From NCBI RefSeq assembly GCF_902713615.1, contig NC_052153.1, positions 149,249,772-149,313,771 on the forward strand: 64,000 nucleotides of DNA, in the 5' to 3' direction. A program made the translations under genes and the position numbers. Positions 3,967 through 52,995 of the stretch are shown one piece after another. The stretch is from Scyliorhinus canicula. Its lineage: Eukaryota. Numbering within the stretch: position 1 is the stretch's first letter; each line of letters begins with the position of its first letter. The notes under the pieces are model-generated. The model was given only the letters and a program-made list of their open reading frames with translations, did no database searches and was not told where the DNA came from.

Positions 3967-4874
3967 ATTATCAAATCTAATGAGACCTTTCCAGAAATGA
4001 GGGAATTTTGGAAAATTTAAACCAATGCACCTAGAACCTCAGCAGCCACTTTTTAGACCCTTGGATGAAGTCCATCAGAACCTGAGGACTTAAGAAACTG
4101 TTGGTGATTGCAGCCAGATGCAACTGCTTGCCAGTCTATTGACGGCTCCCTTACCAATATTGCTTCAATCGATGTGTCGTAGCAATGTGGGGAACATGTA
4201 GTAGTTTTGTCTTTGTACTCGCACTTGCCAAACTTCCAATAAGTTTTGGAAAGCATCTATTTCTTCACAGTGCCAAAAGCAATGAGGCTCAATTCATTTA
4301 GAATTGAAAACATGTCTGCAAGATAAGATATAGTTAGCATCCAACTCTCATTTGCCCATACTTCCCTGATTATAACTCGTGTGGGCTTTGCATCCTGATC
4401 TACATTGACACAATTAACAAAGCCATACTTCAATAAATCATCTTAATCGTGCTTTGTTCTTGATTTCAGTTTCTTAATGGGTTGTTCACCAGAGACCCTG
4501 GAGCTCTGTATACAGCACATATACCAGCACTGCTTTGTTCTGCCATGGACACTCCTCTGCAGCTCTCTCCAGCAGATTCAGTTGTGAGATCCTGGTCTGT
4601 TTGTGTCGCTGGCCTTCTCTTTGTTACGCCAAAATGACCCATCTTAGCTCTTCACAGTCCTGTTGCTTGCTTGCTGGCAGCTACAAAATTGAGTAATCTC
4701 TCCTCCATGATTTTGTGCCCAAAGCACGGACATATAGGGCGCATTGTCAATGTATGTGATGGGCACGAGACCTGATCTCTGCCACAGCTTCTGGTGGGCA
4801 GACTCCAGCGTTTGCATTTAAAGGCTGGTCACGGCTGACATTCTCAACTTCAAAGCTGGATGTGGCCGGCATTC

Positions 4875-6713
4875 TTTTTTTTTAATAAATGTTTTTATTC
4901 TCCATTTTCACATTTTCCTTCAAAATTTACACCCCACCCACAAACAGTAAACGGTAACAAATACAAAATCAATCCCCTTAACAATAACAACGATCCCATC
5001 CTCCCACCACCCCAAACAACGGCCCACCTGTCAATATATGCATCCAATAACACAAAGCCTCCCAAGGTGGAATCAAAAAAACAAAGGAAAAAAGGAGTCT
5101 GGGACCGCCCATGGTCACCATAGAGTCCACTCCCCCCCCCCCACATTCACCGCCGTCCAACCTCTGAAAGAGTACCGTACATGATACCCAAGAGTTGTAA
5201 ATCCACCCCCCTCCAACTCCTCCCATCCACTACCTCATGTAAAACTCCTTCCCCCAATCTCGGTTCCTTCCCCTCCAACTTTCCACCCCGGCTATACCAC
5301 TCGGACCCTGTTCTGCCAGGCTCCGATGGCCGCAGCCCCTCCCCCCACCTTATTCCCATTGACTGCCCGGTTTAAACCGGCCAGCGCGGAGGTCCCCGCC
5401 TGGGTCCCTTTCCCCTTGCCCGGCCCCAGGAAAGCCCAGAAATCCCCTTTCAGCACACACACCCCGCATATCCACCTACACCCCAAAGAGCCCTCACTTC
5501 GAGTGCAAGTCCCTCCTTCTTCCCTTGTCCAAGTATACAACATTGGCTCCTTTAGCCCACACACCCGCACGCAGTGAAACAGAAAAGAAGAAAATACAGT
5601 CCTGAGGTTACATCGTCACATGGCCATTTCTCAATTTCTCAGTTCTGCCACAGTCCTTCTGCCTTCGCAAACTCCTCCGCTGCTTCCGCTGTTCCAAAAT
5701 AAAAGTCCTTGAGCTTATAAGTCACCCTCAGCTTCGCTGGATATACAATGCCGCACTGCACCTTGCTAATGTACAGTGCCCTCTTCACCCGGTCGAAAGC
5801 AACCCGCCTCCTCGCCAGCTCCACCGTAAAGTCCTGGTATACACGTATACCAGCTCCAGCCCACTGCACCACCCGCTTCTGCTTGGCCCAGGACAGGACC
5901 TTCTCCTTCACACTGTACCTACGGAAGCACAGAGTCACTACCCTTGGCGGCTCACTTGCCTTTGGTACAGCCTCCATGACCGATGAGCCCTATCCAGATC
6001 ATATCGGGAGGGATCCTCCCCCTCCCCCAATAGTTTCGCCAGCATAGCGGCAAAATACTCAGTCGGCCTCGGCCCTTCAACTCCTTCGGGCAGCCCCACA
6101 ATCCTAAAATTCTGTGGCCTGGATTTGTTTTCCAGGTCTTCCATTTTCCCTCGTAGATCCTTGTTAATCTCCATCACCTTCCGCATCTCCTTCCCCACTG
6201 AGGTAAGTTGATCACCGTGCTGCAATAACGTCTCCTCCACTTCCTTCAGCACCTCCCCTTGCGCCCGCACCTCCGCTATTGCACTCGCTGCCGCCGTCGT
6301 CACCGGGGAAATCGCCTCTTTCACCAGCACACTCAAAACCTCCCTCATCTCCTTCCTCATCGCCTCCAAGTGTTTTGTAAACTGCCTTTCGAATTCTGTA
6401 GCCATCACCTTGGTTATCTCTTCAGCCGTAGGCAATGTGGCCTCTCCTGGTGCTCCAGCCTCCTTTTTCCTTGGTGACCCCGTGGTGACCTCTCCATTCC
6501 CCGACGGACCCTCAGCTGTCTTTTTAATGGCTGTTTTCTTGCTGGTCCTGGACATCCTCTTCTGCTGTGTCTCCTGTGTGGCTTCTATGTGCCTTCTGCC
6601 TGCTTTTTATGCGTCCGTGGAGCCTGGGAGCGGGCTTAAAGCCCCGAAAATGCCATTCCCGAGTGGGAGCCCTCCATTGCGCGGCTGCCTCCCGCCGCCG
6701 TCACCGGAAGTCC
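4875..6713 (-). mobile_element. L1-clade derivative with 5' UTR, ORF1 (frameshifted), 3' UTR and poly-A but no EN/RT (HAL1-like)
   Basis: 5' GGACTTCCGG; ORF1p motifs DLENKSR..NFRIVGLPEG, DRAHR, VYQDF, YPAKLRV (5639-6555); 3' UTR similar to 48549-48800; poly-A at 4875-4883. Confidence 0.85.
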
Positions 6714-6929
6714 TATGGACATTTTATTAAAAGGTTGGGTTTAGATAAACTGGCTATAGGTGTGAAAGTAAAAGGTACTGACAGAGGTTTTGCGTGGGAG
6801 AGGAAGAAATACTGAATAGTGTGCTCGGGGCTTGGTGTTTGATTTACATCAATAACTTGGATTTCAAAATTATAAAGTTGGAAACTTTGAAGCTGGTAAC
6901 AAATTATAAAGGTAGTGGAATTGAAGATT

Positions 6930-7553
6930 AGATTTAGATGTATTGACATGTGTACCGAGGTACTGTGAAAAGTATTGTTCTGCAGATTGTCCAGGCAGAT
7001 TGTTCCATGCATGAAAAAACAAAGGACATTATACACATTGTAAATACATAGACATCTGGTGAAGCATATGGAGTGTAGCGCTACAACAGTAGAGAAGATG
7101 CATGGAGAGATCAGTTCAGTCCATAAAAGGGTCATTCGGGAGTCTGGTAACAGCGGGGAAGAAGTTGGTTTTGAATCTGTTAGTACATGTTCTCAGATTT
7201 TTGTACCTTCTGCCCGATGGAAGAGGTTAGAAGAGAGAATAACTCAGGTGGGAGGCGTCTTTGATTATGCTGCCCGCTTTCACAAGGCAGCGGGCGGTGT
7301 AGACAGAGTTAATGGATGGGAGGCAGGTTCCTGTGATGACTGGGCAGTGTTCACAACCCTCTGTGTTTCTTGGGGTTTCGGGCCAAGCAGTTGCCATACC
7401 AGGCTGTGATGCAGCCAGATAAGATGCTTTTTATGGTGCACCTGTAAAGATTGGTAATAGTCAATGTGAACATACTGCATTTCCTTAGCTGTTGTGCTTT
7501 CTTTGTCATAGCTTCAACGTAGGTGGACCTGAACAGATTGTTGGTGATGTGTA
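6930..7553 (-). mobile_element. Rex1/Babar-clade LINE 3' fragment (continues at 12154-12290)
   Basis: Homologous to 27640-28200; 3' hairpin tail TTTTCACAGTACCTCGGTACACATGTC. Confidence 0.75.
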
Positions 7554-7628
7554 TGTTGTGTTATGTGATCTTGTCTGTGCAATGAATCGACAGAACTGCT
7601 GGTGACTTAACTAGAATGATGTTTTATT

Positions 7629-7878
7629 TTTTTAAAAATAATTTTTATTGAAATTTTTACAAAATACAAAATATAAACATCTTAACTCTATTAACAAACA
7701 ACCGTGGTAACACCCCATGAATAATACCCCCCAGCTTCAAGAGCAACTTCAAACAAAAGGAAAGAACAAAAACAAAAAAAAACAAAAACAAAAAAACAAA
7801 AGAGCACCCAGACAACGAAAGGGAAAGAGATAGCACCCTCCACAAACCCATGTGCACAGTTCTCCCCCCCCCCCCCAA
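7629..7878 (-). mobile_element. L1-type 3' UTR fragment inserted in an LTR
   Basis: Poly-A end; TSD TAGAAT(G/C)ATGTTTTATT at 7612-7628 and 7879-7895. Confidence 0.75.
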
Positions 7879-9777
7879 TAGAATCATGTTTTATTGATGT
7901 ACACATGGTAAAGTAACAACCAGAATGCTAGACAGACCAAGTTACTGACTGAGTTTCATTAACTCTCCTGGACGTATCCTTAAGTGCGACTGTCCTGGGG
8001 TACACCTTACAACCTTCTACCAATAGCTGGATGTCACATGACTGATGCCACCGCTGGTCGGAGGTCGCACTGCTGAGTCCATGCGATATTGTTCACAGGC
8101 ATATCACCACATCCCCCTTCCTTTGCAGGTTATTAATATCTATATACAAACATTGATCAACATCTGTAGTTTACACATTTGGTTTCTGTATCAACAATTT
8201 TAACTCATGTGTCCATAAACATGACAGGCCAACTAGGTGTGTACGTTCCTTAAACACAGCTCATTTTGCATCTCTCATGGGATCACCCCGCTGATCGCTT
8301 GGGCTGTTGCCAGTCTTTTTGAAGACTGGTTAACGTGCCGGTCTCTTGCTTTGAATCCTTCTGATGCAAAGCTTTTTGAAGGCATGTATCCTTGTTGGCC
8401 ACACCCGCGTCACCAGCTTTTCTTTCTTTTGTTTCTTTACATGACTCTGTTTGCTGCTCCTGCTGCGTCGTTGTGTGTTCTCTACCTCTGGTCTGTCGGC
8501 CCCAACATCGACATTTTCACTCCTGGTTTCGTCAATGGGATGCTCTGCCTCTCCCACTCTCCTTCACTTCCTCTTTTTAACTTTGATGAACCTTTTGTGA
8601 GTGCTTCTCTGTTTACATTTGGGTTTGGCAACCCCTGTCTTACTACTGGTCTGCACAATGTGCACAGATGTGCACATTGTAGTCTTATTGTCACAAGCCT
8701 ACTTGTGACAATAAGCAATTATTATTATTATGTGCACCCCGTGATTTCTAGTTCGTCAAAGAATTAAGATTCTTGCAGCTGGTACACCTTCGTAATCACC
8801 TCATTTGTGAAATACGCATTAGGCTAGAACTTAAACTCCAGAGTGAAGCTCCTTGGCTTTTCACACTTTGAACATTTAACATTCATTTCTTGTAGATGCT
8901 TTAATACAGGCTCATAATGCTGCTGTATCATGCCGCTGAGTATATATACCTTCTTGAAGACTGTTAACCCGAAGCCTGCAATGCTCTTTGGCTCTTCTGT
9001 CTCTGTCCGATTCGTCGCCCTCCACACAGACTTCTGTTGAATCCTCATCGAATGACTGCACTATCGTATCTCTTTGGGATTTGTCGAGTTCGGCTGGCCA
9101 CCCATCTTCTGGAATGTACAGTCACTCAACTAGGTTCAGGGACTCACTTGCATCCACTCCTATGATGGATTCAACTTTCATGTCCACAATATAAAATGGT
9201 AGTATGTACATTGTGTCGTGCACTCCTAGCTCAAGCTCAAATTCACCTAACGTCTCAATCCTTTTCTTACCGTGGTGTATGGGCGATCCCGGTCGATCAA
9301 CGACTTTCAGCTGCATGTTCAGCTTCTGCAAAACAGTTTGACTGAGGAGGTTGTCCCTCATTGCAATGTCAAGGCCTCAGCGTACAAATGAGTTGGTTTT
9401 GATGGCATCAGGTTTGTTCTTACTAATGCCGTTATCTTTTGAGATTATATCTTCATCTTTCTGGGTCGGTCTCTTCTAGTCCTTGGTTGCAATGAGATTG
9501 ATGAAGAACTGTTTGTCGGGAGGCATCTCATCAACTGTGTTGACTGATCTGATTTGGTCCATTGTAGGATGCGAGAAACATTGTTTCGCAAAATAGCCGA
9601 CACGGCCACACCTGGAACATACTTCTCCAAAGGCCGGACATTGCCGTGGGCCATGTCGGTTGTTACATTTCTGGCACAAGATAGCGGTCGCTTAAAATGG
9701 CTGCCGCACCGAGACCACGTTTCTTATTGGCCTGTGTCACACTGCACTCAAAATGGCCACCCACACTGAGACATTTC

Positions 9778-10530
9778 TTTTTGTTTTTAAATATTTTTAT
9801 TCTCCTTTTTCACATTTTCATCCAATTTTAAACCCACCAACAAACAATCAACAGTAACAAATACAATGTCAAACCCCTGGTCAACAATCCCTTCCTCCCA
9901 CCAACCTCCAACATTTTAAATACAAACATCAAGGAAAAGGAATCAGGAGTCCACCATCCACCCATACATAGTCATCAACAACATACACAGTCCAAATCTC
10001 CCGCATCCCCCCCCCACCCCAATTGTTCAATGTCATGCAATTCTTGAAAGTGCATAATTAAAAAAAAAAATTTAGAGTGCCCAATCTTTTCCAATTAAGG
10101 GGCAATTTAGCATGGCCAATCCACCTATCCCACACATCTTTTGGGTTGTGGGGGTGAAACCCACGCAAACACGGGGAGAATGTGCAAACTCCACACAGAC
10201 AGTGACCCAGGGCCAGGATTCGAACCCGGGTTCTCAGCGCCGTAGGCAGCAATGCTAACCACTGTGCCACTGTGCTGCCCTGGAAGTGCATAATGAACAA
10301 AGCCAATGAATTGTAGAACCCTTCCATCCTTCTCCTCACTTCAAACTTCACCTCTAGTGTTAAAAACATCAACAGATTCCCCCGCCACGCCAGGGCACAG
10401 GGTGGAGAAACTAACCTCCACCAAAACAGGATCCGCCTTCGGGCGATCAGCGAGGCGAAGGCTAAAACATCTGCCTCCGTTCCTGCTTCCACCCCGGCCG
10501 ATCCGATACCCTGAATATGGCCTCCAGAGG
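9778..10530 (-). mobile_element. 5'-truncated L1 (ORF2 C-terminus + 3' UTR)
   Basis: ADVLAFASLIARRRIL..W motif as in 48738-49214; poly-A end. Confidence 0.8.
10059..10280 (-). mobile_element. Short poly-A V-SINE nested in L1
   Basis: TSD AAGTGCATAAT at 10048-10058 and 10284-10294. Confidence 0.88.
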
Positions 10531-10976
10531 ACCTAGCTCGAGGACCACATATCTTTTTGGCCTGCATCACAGTGCTGATGACGCTGGCATCCTCTTCCAT
10601 GTTGGAGCCAAAATGTTTCAGAGTGAGTGTACTGTTTTGTTCTGCTCTGTTGAAGCCCTTCTTTCTGGGTACGCGTACTAAATGTGTCACGCTCAGAAGC
10701 TTCATTTTTCTTCAGAGAGCAGTACTGATCGAGGTCCTTTATCACCTCATCGTAGCTCTTACTCTCCTCTTCGCTATCACAAGCAAAGGTATGGTATAGT
10801 TCTATTGCTTGAGGTCCTGCTACTGTGAACAGCAACGCAATAAGCCTCTCGCCAGGCTGTGCCTGCGGCCAAGGGTTACAAAATAGAATCCGAATTGCTG
10901 CTTAAAAGCATGCCAAATGTTTTCTACGTTATCCGAGCATTAAAGCTGGTTGGGTGCCTTTAAACCTTCCATCACT

Positions 10977-11207
10977 GGGCAGCACGGTGGCCTAGTGGTT
11001 ACCACAACTGCCTCACGGCGCTGAGGTCCCAGGTTCAATCCTGGCTCTGGATCACTGTCCGTGTGGAGTTTGCACATTCTCCCCGTGTCTGTGTGGGTTT
11101 CGCCCCCACAACCCAAAAATTTGCAGAGTAGGTGGATTGGCCATGCTAAATTGCCCCTTAATTGGAAAAAATAATTGGGTAATCTAAATTTATAAAAAAA
11201 AAGAAAG
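10977..11207 (+). mobile_element. Short poly-A V-SINE
   Basis: 15-bp TSD AAACCTTCCATCACT at 10962-10976 and 11208-11222. Confidence 0.9.
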
Positions 11208-15506: not shown

Positions 15507-15670
15507 TTTTTTATAACTTTAGAGCACCCAATTCATTTTTTCCCATTAAGCAACAATTTTAGTGTGGTGCACCTATCCTGCACATTTTTGGGTTGTGGGG
15601 GCGAAACCCACGCAAACACGGGGAGAATGTGCAAACTCCACACGGACAGTGACCCAGAGCTGGGATCAAA
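15507..15670 (-). mobile_element. Short poly-A V-SINE (head lost)
   Basis: V core and poly-A tail. Confidence 0.75.
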
Positions 15671-15719
15671 CCGGCCCTGGGCGATTCCCCGACCCTGCGG
15701 GGGATCGGAGAATTCCGCC

Positions 15720-16236
15720 CCTGTTCTCCAGGTCCTCCAGCTTCTCCTGCATTCTTTTCTGGCGGTCGTTCATCACCTCCACCTTGGTCTCCAGCACGGT
15801 TATGTATTCCTCGTGCTCGGACACCTTTTTCTCCACCTCCTGGATCGCTCTTCCGTGGGTCTCTTGATTCTGCACAACTTGATCATTCGAAGCCTTAATC
15901 GTGTCCAGCATGTCCTCCTTCAGCTTGGCGAAGCAATCTTCGAAAAACTTCACCAGCTGCTCCGTCGACCACTGTGCCGTCTCGCCGTAGCCCTTGCTCA
16001 CCGCCATGCTTTCCCGCGTTATCGGCTCTGCTCGCATCTTCCTTATAGGACTTTATCTTCTCACACAGCCACTTCTAGTCCAATTCTCCATACACCGGAG
16101 GGGGATTTCTCCTCGCTCTTCACCAATTTTATCCCATAAAATCCGGAAAGAAACGGGGGAAAAAGGTCCAAAACTCCGTCACAGACGGGAGCTATCAAAT
16201 GTGTGACCTACTCCTCCGTGGCCACCATCGGAAGTC
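15720..16236 (-). mobile_element. L1 5' end (5' UTR + ORF1 coiled coil), 3'-truncated
   Basis: Starts GACTTCCGATGG; ORF ...IQEVEKKVSEHEE...EKLEDLENR. Confidence 0.8.
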
Positions 16237-27639: not shown

Positions 27640-28435
27640 ATACGATAAATATACGATGTAAATACATAGACATAGAAATACATAGACATTGGGTGAAGCA
27701 TACGGAGTGTAGTGCTACAACACTAGAGAAGATGCATAGAAAGATCAGTTCAGTCCATAAGAGGCCATTCAGGAATCTGGTAACAATTGGGAAAGAAGCT
27801 GTTTTTGAAGCTATTGGTGCGTGTTCTCAAACATTTGTATCTTCTGTCCGATGGAAGAGAGAATAACCAGGTGGGAGGGGTCTTTGATTATGCTGCTTGC
27901 TTTCCCAAGGAAGTGGGAGGTGTAGACAGAACAACTGGATGGGAGGCGGGTTTGCGTGATGGACTGGGCTGTGTTCATGATTCTGTAATTTCTTACGGCC
28001 TTGGTAGAGCAGTTGACATAGCAAGCTATGATGCAGCCAGATGGGATACTTTCTATGGTGCATCTATAAAAATTGTTGGCAGTCATTACAGACATGCCGA
28101 ATTTCCTTAATTTCCTGAGGAAGTATAGGCGCTGTTGTGCTTTTTTGGTCATAACATCGTTGTGAGTGGACCAGGACAAATTGTTGATGATATTTACACC
28201 TAGGAATTTGAAGCTGTCAACCATCTCCACCATGGCACCATTGATGCAGACAGGGGCGTGTACAACACTTTGCTTCCTGAAGTCAGTGACCAACTTCTTA
28301 GTTTTGCTGACGCGAGGGAGAGATTGTTATCATTGCCCCATGCCACTAAGTTGTCTATCCCCCTCCTGTACTCTGACTCATCGTTGTTTGAGATCTGACC
28401 CAATATGGTCGTGTCATCAGCAAATTTGTAGATAA
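27640..28435 (-). mobile_element. Rex1/Babar-clade LINE RT C-terminal fragment
   Basis: KFADDTTILGQISNNDESEYR, FKFLGVNI..NLSW, KKAQQRLYFLRKLRKF, FYRCTIES. Confidence 0.88.
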
Positions 28436-48548: not shown

Positions 48549-50508
48549 TTTAAAAAAAAAAATATTTTTATTCTCCTTTTTCACATTTTCTCCCGAATTT
48601 ACACCCACCAACAATAAACAATAAGCAGCAACAAATATGTCAATCCCTATAATAATAACAACTATCCCATCCTCCCACCAACCCCCAAACATCAGCCCGC
48701 ATGTTTACATAAACAAATGACAAAAAGGAATAAGGGATTACCCATAGTCACCCTTAATACACACAGCCCCCCCCAACCCTCCCACCCATATCCCCCCCAA
48801 CCAATGTTCGATGTTATCCAGTTTTTGAAAGTGCATAATGAATAATGCCCATGACTTGTAGAACCCCTCTATCCTCCCCCTCAGTTCAAACTTAACCTTA
48901 TCCAGGGTCAAGTATTCCAACAGGTCCCCCCCCCGCCACGCCAGGGCACAAGGTGGAGAGGCTGCTCTCCATCCCAGCAGGATCCGCCTTCGGGCGATCA
49001 ATGAGGCGAAGGCTACGATATCTGCCTCCGCACCCGTTTCCAACCCTGGCTGATCTGACACCCCGAATATGGCCTCCCGGGCACCCGGGTCCAGTTTCAC
49101 GTGCACCACCTTGGAGATTACCCTAAAAACCTCCTTCCAGTAATCCTCTAGCTTTGGACAGGACCAAAACATATGAACGTGATTAGCGGGGCCCCCTGCA
49201 ACGTTCACGCACATCTTCTACTTCTTCAAAGAATCGGCTCATCCTCGCCCTCGTGAGGTGTGCTCTGTATACCATCTTCAGCTGTATCAGCTCCAACCTC
49301 GCACATGAGGTGGAGGCATTTACGCCTCCGGAGCACCTCACACCAGACCCCCTCCTCTATAACCTCTCCCAACTCTTCCTCCCACTTTGTTTTGATCCCT
49401 TCCAGTGGCGCCTTATCCTCTTCCAAAATAGCTCCATACACTGTTGACACTACCCCCTTCTCCAGTCCCCTTGTCGTCAGCAACTCCTCCAGCAATGTGG
49501 AGACCAGTTCCTCCGGGAAGCTCTGTATCTCCTTTCTGGCAAAATCTCAAACCAGCATGTATCTAAACATTTCTCCCCGCTCCAGCCCATACTTCGCTTC
49601 CAGCTCCTTCAATCCTGCAAACCGACCCCTAAGAAACAAATCTTTTAGCATCTTAATCCCCTTCTCTTCCCATTTTGAAAATTTCCATCCCACCTCCCTG
49701 GCTCAAATCTGTAGTTCCCCCAAATGGCATTTCCCTTGACCCTGCCCCCAACCCGAAGTGTTGGCGAAACTGCCTCCAGATTTTCAAGGAAGCTATTATA
49801 ACCGGACTTTCCGAGTATTTCCCCAGAGCTATTGGGAGCGGCGCTGTTGCTAGCGCTTTCAGTCCCGACCCCCTGCACAATCGCTCCTCCATTCTGATCC
49901 ACTGGGAATCAACCCCTCTGACCCAGCACCGCACCTTCTCCACATTCGCTGCCTAGTAGTTGTAATCAGCTTCGGGAGACCCAAATCCCCTGCCTGCCTT
50001 TCCCTCTGTAGCAGCACCTTTCTCACTCTGGCCACCTTCCCTCTCCATATGAACGAGGTAATCCTTCCCTCAATCTCCCTGAAAAAAGCCTTCGGCAGGA
50101 AAATCGGTAGGCATTGAAAAATAAACAGAAATCACGACAACACATTCATTTTAACCGCCTGCAACCGACCCGCCAGTGACAGAGGGAGACCATCCCACCT
50201 TGCCAGATCGGCTTTCACTCTCACCACCAAACTAGTGATATTGTACCTGCAAAACCTCCCCCACTCCGGGGCAACCTGCACCCCCAGATACCTAAAGTGA
50301 GTCCCTGCCCTACGGAATTGCAGCCCCCCCACCCCTGCCCCCACCCCCGGCCGAGACACCACAAAATACTCACTCTTGTCGAGGCTCAGCTTGTACCCCG
50401 AGAAAGACCCAAATACTTGCAGTAGCTCCAATATGCCCTCTATCAACACACTCGGTTCCGACACATACAGCAGCAAGTCGTCGGCATATAAGGACACCCT
50501 ATGCTCTA

Positions 50509-50549
<41 letters not shown>

Positions 50550-52573
50550 CACTATTCCTTTCCATGCTCCCGAACTTCTTAATGCGATGGCCAATGGCTC
50601 AATCGCAAGTGCAAACAGCAGGGGGGGACATTGGACATCCCTGCCTTGCCCCACGGTGGAGAGAAAAGTATCTCGAGCTGATGTTGTTTGTGCGGACACT
50701 CGCCTTCTGCTCCTTATATAATAGTTTTACCCAGTTCACAAATCTTGGTCCAATCCCAAACCGCTCCAGAACTGCCATCAAGTACCCCCATTCTACCTGG
50801 TCAAACGCTTTCTCGGCATCCAATGCCACAACCACCTCTGTTTCCTTCCCTCCCGCCGGTGCCATAACAACGTTCAAAATCCTCCTAACGTTCGAAAAAA
50901 GCTGCCTCCCTCTCACAAACCCCATCTGATCCTCACCTATTACCTTCAGGAGGCACTCCTCCAGCCTACCCGCCAGTACCTTCGCCAATACTTTTGCGTC
51001 CACATTCAGAAGTGATATGGACCTATACGACCCACACTCTGTCGGATCCTTATCTTTTTTAAGCAACAGTGAAATCGATGCCTGCCCCAAGGTTTGTGGC
51101 AACACCCCCTTCCCTATCGCCTCATCAAACATCCCCGCCGTCACGGGTGCCAGCTTATCCTTGAATTTTGTATAATATTCCACTGGAAACCCATCCGGCC
51201 CTGCCACCTTCCCCGACTGCATCCTCCCAATCGCATCCTTTATCTCCTGCTCCACTATTGCTTCTTCTAATGTAGCCCTGTCCCCCTCCCCTAGCCTCGA
51301 GTACTCCAACCCATCTAGAAATTCCTGCATCTCACGGTCTCCCCCGGGTGGCTCTGACCTGTACAACCTCTCGTAAAACTCCTCAAAAACATTGTTAATT
51401 GGCTCCGGGGCCACCACCAATTTCCCTGCCCTATCCATCACCTGGAGAATTTCCCTTGCCGTTGCTTCCCTCTGGAGCTGACCTGCTAAAATACCCCCAT
51501 TCTTACCCGCCTTATCTCCATGTTCATAAACTGCACCCCTCGCTTGTCTCAGTTGGCGCACCGCCTTCCTGGTGGACAGACGGTCTAACTCGCCTGTAGT
51601 TCCTTCCTTTTTTCCAGCTTCGCTGGGTCCCCATCTTCTGCAAAACTCCTATCTACCTCCAACATCTCATCTATTACCCTCTGCCGCTCCAACCTCTCCT
51701 CTTTGTCCACCCTGGCCTTAAACTAAATTACCTCACCCCTCACCACCCCCTTTAGAGCCTCCCAGACAACTGCCTTCAACACCTCACCCATACAGTTGAA
51801 ACCTAGATATTCCTTAATTACCTTTTCAATTTTCTCACAGAACAATTGGTTCCCCAAAAGCCCCACATCCAGTTTCCACCCTGGCCTCTGCGCTAGCCCC
51901 TTACCAGTACCATATCCACCCAATGCGGAGCATGATCTGACACTGCAATTGCCGAGTATTCCGACCCCTTAACCCCAGCCAACAAAGTCTTCCCCACCAC
52001 GAAAAAGTCGATCCGCGAGTATACCTTATGGACTACTGAGAAAAACGAGTACTCCCGTTCCCTCAGGTGCAGAAACCTCCAAGGGTCCACCCCTCCCATT
52101 TCCACCATTAGCCCAGCCAGCGCCTTGCCCCCCCACCTTTGATGGGACCAGCGAGCGTGGCTGTGACCTGTCCGACCTTGGCACCTGCATCAAGTTCCAG
52201 TCCCCCCCCTCCCCCCAATCCGTTTGTGTGTGTCCAAGTCGTGGATGGCCCCGAACACCTTCTTTGCGAATCCCACATTGTCCCAATTGGGACTGTATAC
52301 ACTTAACAGCACCACTAACCTCCCCTCCAGCGCCTCCTGTCACAATCACACATCGACCCCCCCTGATCTGCCACCACCACCTCCATCTGGAAGTGTACCC
52401 TTTTGCTGACCATTACCGCTACCCCTCGAGCCCTTCCGTCAAATCCAGAGTGAAACACCTGACTAACCCAGGCCTTTTTATTTCTCACCTGGTCCTTCAC
52501 CCTCAAGTGAGTCTCCTGCAGCATTGCCACATCGGCTTTCAAACTTTTAAGATGCGCAAGCACCCTTGACCTC
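48549..52573 (-). mobile_element. 5'-truncated L1 with nearly all of ORF2 (EN, RT, C-terminal Cys domain), frameshifted
   Basis: LQETHL, SRIDFF, SDHAP, GPDGFPVEYY, LDAEKAFD, RQGCP, YADD, HMFWSCP; 20-bp TSD TTGTTCAGG(G/A)AGGATTTATT at 48529-48548 and 52574-52593. Confidence 0.95.
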
Positions 52574-52995
52574 TTGTTCAGGAAGGATTTATTCATGAAG
52601 TTTATTTCAAGAACTTGGGTGCAGTGGAAACGTGACAGAAAATTACCATGATATAATAAGGAGCCCTTTCCTGTGGTTGCGACTTAAGTCGCATTGTTAT
52701 ATATTTGCACTGGGAATGCTTCATGCTGACACTTGGTGTTCAAAGTAGAAACAATGCTTTCCGCAGAACAGAAATCTGCATCTTGGCAAGCAATAAAACA
52801 AAATTAGGGTAAAAGTGGAGTGGTAGTTTGTAGCAGCGAATTGCATGCCACTTAGAATTATTTATTAGAATTCCACTGTATTTTACCAGCTTAATTGTCA
52901 TTGCTTGCTGGTGTGGTTGGAGTCTTGAAAATCAGTTGCACTTTAAATTTGAATTTCATTTTGAAATTATTCTGGTGTCTAAATATTTGTTTCAG

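What the first reader, a model, noticed from the sequence alone, without database searches (positions are those of the whole stretch)
4875..6713. ORF1-only 'half-L1' (HAL1-like) retroposon
A ~1.84-kb unit has an intact L1 5' end, a complete ORF1 (one frameshift near 5960-5977), a spacer, then jumps to the last ~20 codons of ORF2 (WIYNSWVSCTVLFQRLD vs GFYKSWALFIMHFQKLD at 48800-48870), the 3' UTR and poly-A. All of EN and RT is missing. The ORF2 remnant is far more diverged than ORF1 appears decayed, as expected if it spread as a non-autonomous family keeping ORF1p rather than arising from a one-off deletion. HAL1 elements are known from mammals; an independent shark lineage would be notable. 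No clear TSD was found.
Basis: partly seen in the sequence, partly recalled or inferred. Interest (0 to 1): 0.72.

Follow-up and report, generated by a model that had tools for sequence, protein, structure and literature searches.

The report
Dead ORF1-only L1 copy, catshark
This is a worn 1.84-kb copy of a jumping gene that keeps the RNA-binding gene (ORF1) and the tail of a shark L1 element but has no copying-enzyme gene. It is most likely one member of a shark counterpart of the mammalian "half-L1" (HAL1) parasites, which this scan has already noted elsewhere in the same genome.

Summary
On the minus strand, 6713-4875 reads:
- a ~158-nt GC-rich leader;
- a 305-codon L1-type ORF1, broken once by a 1-nt deletion in codon 196 (5969/5970);
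- a 409-nt spacer with no detectable homology;
- a decayed remnant of the last ~17-24 ORF2 codons;
- an L1 3' UTR, AATAAA and an A9 tail.

No endonuclease or reverse transcriptase is present, and no target-site duplication (TSD) rises above chance.

The ORF1 product is an L1 ORF1p by sequence and fold (coiled coil, RRM, CTD), although Pfam is silent.

An intact 305-aa paralogue (81-91% identical) and two further copies are annotated in Scyliorhinus torazame.

Two results fit long evolution as an ORF2-less lineage better than a one-off deletion. The last 174 nt are 83% identical to a complete-type L1 in the window, while the ORF2 remnant is only 66%. ORF1 differences fall from 28% at the N-terminus to 8% in the CTD.

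The decisive test, other copies sharing the same junction, could not be run.

The scan found this before: at least ten other notes of ORF1-only L1 derivatives, most of them 1.7-1.96 kb, in the same genome. Some follow-ups report several insertion sites. I did not check those notes.

Verdict: a new member of a known kind (HAL1-like), of modest interest.

The parts
6556..6713 (-). Putative 5' UTR / leader (about 158 nt), GC 62%, CpG o/e 0.73. An ETS-like CCGGAAGT sits at 6704-6711, a few nt from the presumed 5' end. The 5' boundary is approximate.
   Evidence: boundary set by the composition shift only; no TSD; no match to any other sequence in the window
5971..6555 (-). ORF1 codons 1-195: disordered N-terminus, long coiled coil, start of the RRM
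   Evidence: 80.5% identical to P0001 aa 1-195; alignment A1; model of P0001
5969..5970 (-). The only break in ORF1: two nt left for codon 196 (a 1-nt deletion)
   Evidence: tblastn pieces end at 5971 and start at 5968
5639..5968 (-). ORF1 codons 197-305 plus stop (5641-5639): rest of the RRM and the CTD
   Evidence: 90.8% identical to P0001 aa 197-305; phmmer to human L1 ORF1p 2ldy/2ykp/2yko at E 6e-4 to 1e-3 and mouse CTD 2jrb at 4e-3
5230..5638 (-). Spacer of 409 nt with no detectable homology. It is most likely the native inter-ORF region of the parent L1 (inferred).
   Evidence: No hit to the window L1 ORF2, EN start or Pfam. A 45-46% identical ORF1 (P0015) sits about 570 nt upstream of a 1275-aa EN+RT ORF2 on an ENA contig.
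5128..5229 (-). Decayed remnant of the last ~17-24 codons of ORF2 (WIYNSWVSCTVLFQRLD = 5205-5155). The frame is not kept relative to the L1 stop region.
   Evidence: 66% nt identity to 48860-48789
4884..5127 (-). L1-derived 3' UTR. The last 174 nt (5057-4884) are 83% identical to L1a and 80% to L1b. AATAAA is at 4899-4894.
4875..4883 (-). Poly-A tail, 9 A
48557..52596 (-). Comparator, not part of the element: decayed L1 ('L1a') with EN, RT and the ORF2 C-terminus / 3' tail used as reference
9775..10560 (-). Comparator, not part of the element: 3' fragment of a second L1 ('L1b'), interrupted by a SINE

Best explanation
This is a dead copy of a non-autonomous, ORF1-only derivative of a catshark L1, analogous to HAL1.

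Inferred life cycle of the source lineage:
- Transcription starts from a promoter in the GC-rich leader.
- The RNA is translated into an L1-type ORF1p (trimeric coiled coil, RRM, CTD), which coats its own RNA in cis.
- The RNA ends in an L1 3' UTR and poly-A, so the ORF2 protein (endonuclease and reverse transcriptase) of complete L1s with the same tail can copy it into new sites by target-primed reverse transcription.

Shown here: the anatomy, the L1 ORF1p identity, the absence of EN/RT, the L1 tail, and paralogues in a sister species.

Inferred: the promoter, cis-binding, mobilisation in trans, and that the ORF2 loss is shared by a family.

After insertion, this copy took one frameshift and a change at a conserved Arg (SRRQN to SRPQN).
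For: - ORF1p identity. The C-terminal piece hits only L1 ORF1p in the PDB. The AF2 model of the intact paralogue has a helix at 44-144, an RRM and a CTD. The Foldseek top 10 are all the human L1 ORF1p trimer (E ~3e-9), with the RRM 2w7a at TMt 0.75 and the mouse CTD 2jrb at 0.71. Relatives are named L1 ORF1 / RRM proteins in teleosts.
- No EN or RT.
- The tail is collinear with L1a from the ORF2 remnant to AATAAA.
- Uneven divergence: 83% identity in the last 174 nt against 66% in the ORF2 remnant, with nothing upstream. L1a against L1b is even across the same parts, at 81-86%. Neutral decay of one copy cannot produce this pattern.
- ORF1 differences from P0001 fall from 28% (aa 1-50) to 19%, 11.5% and 8% (CTD), Fisher p=0.021. 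There are no stops where about 2.5 would be expected, P(0)=0.07.
- S. torazame carries an intact 305-aa copy as a single 918-nt exon with no other gene called within 6 kb. It also carries two more copies at 77-93% and 60% identity.
- Leads I did not test: at least ten other scan notes of ORF1-only L1 derivatives, most 1.7-1.96 kb, in this genome.
Against: - No second copy with the same junction was seen by me, and none is in this window.
- This copy has no TSD.
- The selection signals are weak (p=0.02 and 0.07), and dN/dS could not be computed without paralogue DNA.
- A parent L1 with a naturally divergent ORF2 end but a similar tail could produce the uneven divergence.
- The absence of a neighbouring ORF2 gene call in S. 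torazame is weak evidence, because annotation pipelines mask repeats.
- Pfam's L1 ORF1 models do not hit.
Confidence: 0.7

Rival explanations
1. This is a one-off product: a single full-length L1 that lost ORF2. The loss would have come from an internal deletion, from splicing of its RNA before insertion, or from template jumping during reverse transcription. It has no descendants.
For: Only one copy is in the window. There is no TSD, and atypical L1 insertions and later deletions often lack one. A related full-length L1 with a long ORF1-ORF2 gap exists (P0015 contig), so a simple ORF2 deletion would give exactly this layout.
Against: The ORF2 remnant is much more diverged than the adjacent tail (66% against 83%), and homology disappears upstream. 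That points to decay before insertion. The other same-sized units noted in this genome are unchecked leads.
Confidence: 0.2
2. This is a processed pseudogene (retrocopy) of a host gene domesticated from L1 ORF1, in the way L1TD1 arose in mammals. P0001 would represent the parent gene.
For: P0001 is annotated as an intact single-exon gene in S. torazame with no ORF2 called nearby. The window copy has a poly-A tail and a frameshift, like a retropseudogene.
Against: The unit carries its own L1 3' UTR to the very end, and AATAAA. S. torazame has several diverged paralogues at 60-93% identity. N-terminal and coiled-coil turnover is fast, which is typical of active L1 ORF1. No orthologues turned up in other vertebrates above about 46% identity.
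Confidence: 0.06

Closest known systems
Mammalian HAL1 (half-L1) elements (Smit 1999; Bao & Jurka 2010, as cited in PMC5753468, PMC13756887 and PMC2241872)
   Same: A non-autonomous L1 derivative that encodes only ORF1p, keeps an L1 3' end and poly-A, and is presumed to be mobilised by L1 ORF2p. HAL1 arose several times independently in mammals.
   Different: The host is a shark. The ORF1p is only about 20% identical to human ORF1p in structure alignments, so this is not descended from any mammalian HAL1. Copy number and a shared junction were not shown here. My three full-text searches of the held papers turned up no report of a HAL1-like element in a shark.
Autonomous L1 of the same genome (window copies at 48557-52596 and 9775-10560)
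   Same: The 3' terminal ~175 nt, AATAAA and the ORF2 C-terminal motif are shared.
   Different: The element lacks about 3.7 kb of ORF2. Its ORF1, leader and spacer have no counterpart in the window's L1 relics.
Drosophila HeT-A (own knowledge, not tested here)
   Same: A non-LTR retrotransposon that encodes only a Gag/ORF1-like protein and depends on the reverse transcriptase of other elements.
   Different: It belongs to the Jockey clade, targets telomeres, has a host function, and its ORF1 fold is unrelated.
L1TD1, a domesticated L1 ORF1 gene of mammals (PMC4161310, PMC11925450)
   Same: A stand-alone protein derived from L1 ORF1.
   Different: L1TD1 is a single syntenic host gene. Here the unit has retroposon hallmarks and diverged paralogues.

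Membership tests
L1-type ORF1p (coiled coil + RRM + CTD) | Long N-terminal coiled coil | tested here: met
   AF2 model of the intact paralogue P0001: a single helix over residues 44-144, pLDDT 86-95. The window copy is 81% identical over this part.
L1-type ORF1p (coiled coil + RRM + CTD) | Central RRM domain | tested here: met
   Foldseek: human ORF1p central domain 2w7a at TMt 0.75, rmsd 3.6 A; ORF1p trimers at E ~3e-9.
L1-type ORF1p (coiled coil + RRM + CTD) | C-terminal domain (CTD) | tested here: met
   phmmer of window 5639-5977: 2ldy at 6e-4, 2ykp at 1e-3, mouse CTD 2jrb at 4e-3. Foldseek 2jrb at TMt 0.71.
L1-type ORF1p (coiled coil + RRM + CTD) | Match to Pfam's L1 ORF1 models | tested here: not met
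   No L1 ORF1 family at E<=1 for the window pieces, or at E<=0.1 for P0001. Those models come mainly from mammals (own knowledge, not checked here). The PDB sequence and fold matches stand.
HAL1-like (ORF1-only, non-autonomous L1 derivative) | Encodes ORF1 of L1 origin | tested here: met
HAL1-like (ORF1-only, non-autonomous L1 derivative) | Lacks the EN and RT of ORF2 | tested here: met
   only about 24 decayed terminal codons remain
HAL1-like (ORF1-only, non-autonomous L1 derivative) | L1 3' end with poly-A signal and A-tail | tested here: met
HAL1-like (ORF1-only, non-autonomous L1 derivative) | Amplified as such: several copies with the same ORF2 deletion junction at different sites | not testable with these tools
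   No catshark genome DNA could be fetched ('file too large' or not on record). The metagenome scan was blank. Scan notes report other copies, unchecked.
HAL1-like (ORF1-only, non-autonomous L1 derivative) | Target-site duplication around the unit | tested here: not met
   The best direct repeat is no better than in control stretches. This may reflect decay or an atypical insertion.
HAL1-like (ORF1-only, non-autonomous L1 derivative) | ORF1 kept by purifying selection in the lineage | tested here: inconclusive
   Domain gradient of aa differences, p=0.021. No stops in either copy, P=0.07 under neutral simulation. dN/dS not computable without paralogue DNA.
Mammalian HAL1 families (by descent) | ORF1 and flanks derived from a mammalian L1 lineage | tested here: not met
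   The host is Scyliorhinus-like. The nearest relatives outside Scyliorhinus are an L1 ORF1 on an ENA contig of unknown origin (P0015, 45-46% identical) and L1 ORF1s at about 37-43%, the named ones from teleosts. Identity to human ORF1p is about 20%. This is an analogue, not a member.

The most novel reading that the evidence does not exclude
Catsharks carry an old, possibly still active, ORF1-only L1 lineage that arose independently of mammalian HAL1. Its ORF1 and last ~175 nt would be kept by selection while the rest of ORF2 decayed, which would make retention of ORF1p a recurrent strategy for parasitising L1 across jawed vertebrates. The intact 305-aa copy in S. torazame would then be a live master element or a domesticated gene.
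Probability: 0.55. Interest if true: 0.55.

Novelty: new member of a known kind. Interest (0 to 1): 0.4.

Why it matters
HAL1 elements have been described only from mammals. Their repeated origin there is the main argument that carrying ORF1p gives an RNA better access to the L1 machinery.

An independent lineage in sharks, about 450 million years removed (own knowledge), would extend that argument to all jawed vertebrates. It would also give a natural system for asking what ORF1p contributes in cis.

This particular copy adds little beyond one more locus. What it does show is the uneven constraint along the unit: tail and ORF1 kept, ORF2 remnant decayed.

Tried and rejected
There is no read-based test of copy number, expression or junctions.
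- The look-up of encoding contigs returned gene tables but no DNA for P0001, P0002, P0014 and P0015. The window's own 205-aa ORF is not on record.
- The search for related loci in metagenome contigs found no relative.
- The search of earlier findings by place (near) and by sequence was blank.
- Bao & Jurka 2010 is not held in the paper library.
- Pfam on the ORF1 pieces and on P0001 gave no L1 family.
- Rfam on 4000-11000 gave nothing.
- Consensus folding of the three L1 tails gave -3.7 kcal/mol and no covariation. There is therefore no evidence for a conserved 3' stem-loop.
- The scan of the spacer for the EN N-terminus reached a best score of 21 against a null maximum of 20, so that idea was rejected.
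- A second weak match of the ORF2 C-terminal peptide inside the spacer (5488-5435) is G-rich and not collinear. I treated it as chance.
- No empty-site paralogue of the flanks exists in the window.

Full report
**What is there**

The unit lies on the minus strand. From 5' to 3' it reads:
- **Leader:** a GC-rich leader of about 158 nt (6713-6556; GC 62%, CpG o/e 0.73).
- **ORF1:** it starts at 6555.
- **Spacer:** 409 nt (5638-5230).
- **ORF2 remnant:** a short remnant of the end of ORF2 (5229-5128).
- **3' UTR:** 5127-4884, with AATAAA at 4899-4894.
- **Tail:** nine A (4883-4875).

tblastn with the intact paralogue P0001 splits ORF1 into 6555-5971 (aa 1-195, 80.5% identical) and 5968-5642 (aa 197-305, 90.8%). 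Neither piece contains a stop codon.

**ORF1 is L1-type**

- Pfam is silent on both pieces and on P0001.
- The C-terminal piece finds only L1 ORF1p among solved structures: 2ldy at 6e-4, 2ykp and 2yko at 1e-3, and the mouse CTD 2jrb at 4e-3.
- An AlphaFold2 model of P0001 (pLDDT 76) has a disordered head, one helix over residues 44-144, an RRM and a CTD.
- Its ten best Foldseek matches in the PDB are all the human L1 ORF1p trimer (E ~3e-9). The isolated RRM (2w7a, TMt 0.75) and the mouse CTD (2jrb, TMt 0.71) also match.
- More distant relatives (37-46% identical) are L1 ORF1 proteins. Those that carry names come from teleosts.

**ORF2 is gone except for its tail end**

The spacer ORFs hit no Pfam family. 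The window's own L1 relic at 48557-52596 ('L1a') gives RVT_1 (1e-23) and Exo_endo_phos. tblastx, tblastn and a motif scan for the endonuclease N-terminus find nothing in 5230-5638 above chance.

The remnant is real. The L1a peptide YKSWALFIMHFQKLD scores 38 against YNSWVSCTVLFQRLD at 5199. That is the best match outside the two L1 copies among 127,912 six-frame positions of the window. DNA homology then continues collinearly (5144-5079 at 73.5%, 5057-4884 at 83%) to the AATAAA.

**Ends**

No direct repeat flanking the unit exceeds what control stretches give.

The 5' boundary rests on the composition shift alone. An ETS-like CCGGAAGT sits at 6704-6711, close to the presumed first base. It would suit an internal promoter, but that is inference.

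**One-off deletion or lineage?**

Three results bear on this.

1. *Divergence from L1a is uneven.* It is 83% in the last 174 nt, 69% in the next 70 nt, 66% in the last 24 ORF2 codons, and undetectable upstream. The two ordinary L1 relics in the window are evenly similar to each other over the same parts, at 81-83% and 86%. Decay after insertion acts evenly. The unevenness therefore predates the insertion. Either the source had long been free of ORF2 constraint while keeping its 3' end, or the tail was exchanged between lineages.

2. *ORF1 differences from P0001 fall along the protein.* The rates are 28% (aa 1-50), 19% (coiled coil), 11.5% (RRM) and 8% (CTD), Fisher p=0.021. A neutral simulation that reaches the same 48 replacements needs about 73 substitutions and produces 2.5 stops on average, with P(0 stops)=0.07. 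This is suggestive, not strong.

3. *The lineage is multi-copy in the sister species.* S. torazame has an intact 305-aa copy on a single 918-nt exon with no other gene called within 6 kb. It also has a second copy at 77-93% identity and a third at 60%.

A more distant full-length L1 supports reading the spacer as the parent's native inter-ORF region. On an ENA contig, an ORF1 45-46% identical (P0015) is followed about 570 nt downstream by a 1275-aa EN+RT ORF2. That reading is inferred.

**What could not be done**

- The contig look-ups gave gene tables but no DNA.
- The metagenome scan was blank.

The scan's own notebook lists at least ten other first-reader notes of ORF1-only L1 derivatives in this genome, most between 1.7 and 1.96 kb. 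Two follow-ups state that the family occurs at three or more sites and in a sister species, and one names the genome as the small-spotted catshark. These are leads that raised my odds. I did not verify them.

**Comparison with what is known**

HAL1 elements are ORF1-only L1 derivatives described from mammals. There they arose several times and are thought to use L1 ORF2p (PMC5753468, PMC13756887, PMC2241872, PMC4161310). My three full-text searches of the held papers turned up no report of a HAL1-like element in a shark.

This unit works like a HAL1 on every feature I could test. It is not a member of the mammalian families by descent.

**Verdict**

This is a real, decayed copy of what is most likely (0.7) a shark HAL1-like lineage. 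It is a new member of a known kind, and the scan has already met it at other loci. A one-off ORF2 deletion (0.2) and a retrocopy of a domesticated ORF1 gene (0.06) remain possible.

Noticed in passing
window 48557-52596 (minus): Decayed L1 with EN (Exo_endo_phos) and RT (RVT_1) in several broken frames. It begins at or near the ORF2 start codon (52596), and no ORF1 is detectable upstream. I used it as the reference for the tail.
   Followed up: partly
window 9775-10560 (minus), SINE at about 10062-10275: 3' fragment of a second L1 whose ORF2 C-terminus is interrupted by a SINE. The L1 sequence (ATTATGCACTT..CA.G) is repeated on both sides, as a target-site duplication would be. ARAGORN finds no tRNA in the SINE.
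   Followed up: partly
window, 10 sites (e.g. 10253, 31448, 37677, 57377): The SINE head motif GGCACAGTGGTTAGCA occurs 10 times with at most 2 mismatches, against 0.04 expected by chance. This is a high-copy SINE family.
   Followed up: no
window 15666-16037 (minus): A 123-aa ORF with a coiled-coil segment ending in KLEDLENR. It is 23-30% identical to the coiled coil of the ORF1 proteins P0001-P0003. It is probably a fragment of another, unrelated L1 ORF1.
   Followed up: no
window 7031-7548 and 27666-28191: Two copies of an unidentified dispersed repeat, 75.6% identical over 540 nt, about 320 nt from the 5' side of the element.
   Followed up: no
S. torazame GCA_047496885.1 (no DNA held): All three annotated ORF1 paralogues (P0001, P0002, P0014) are reported on the same 330.8-Mb contig. 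This may be clustering, or only partial coverage of that assembly in the collection.
   Followed up: no
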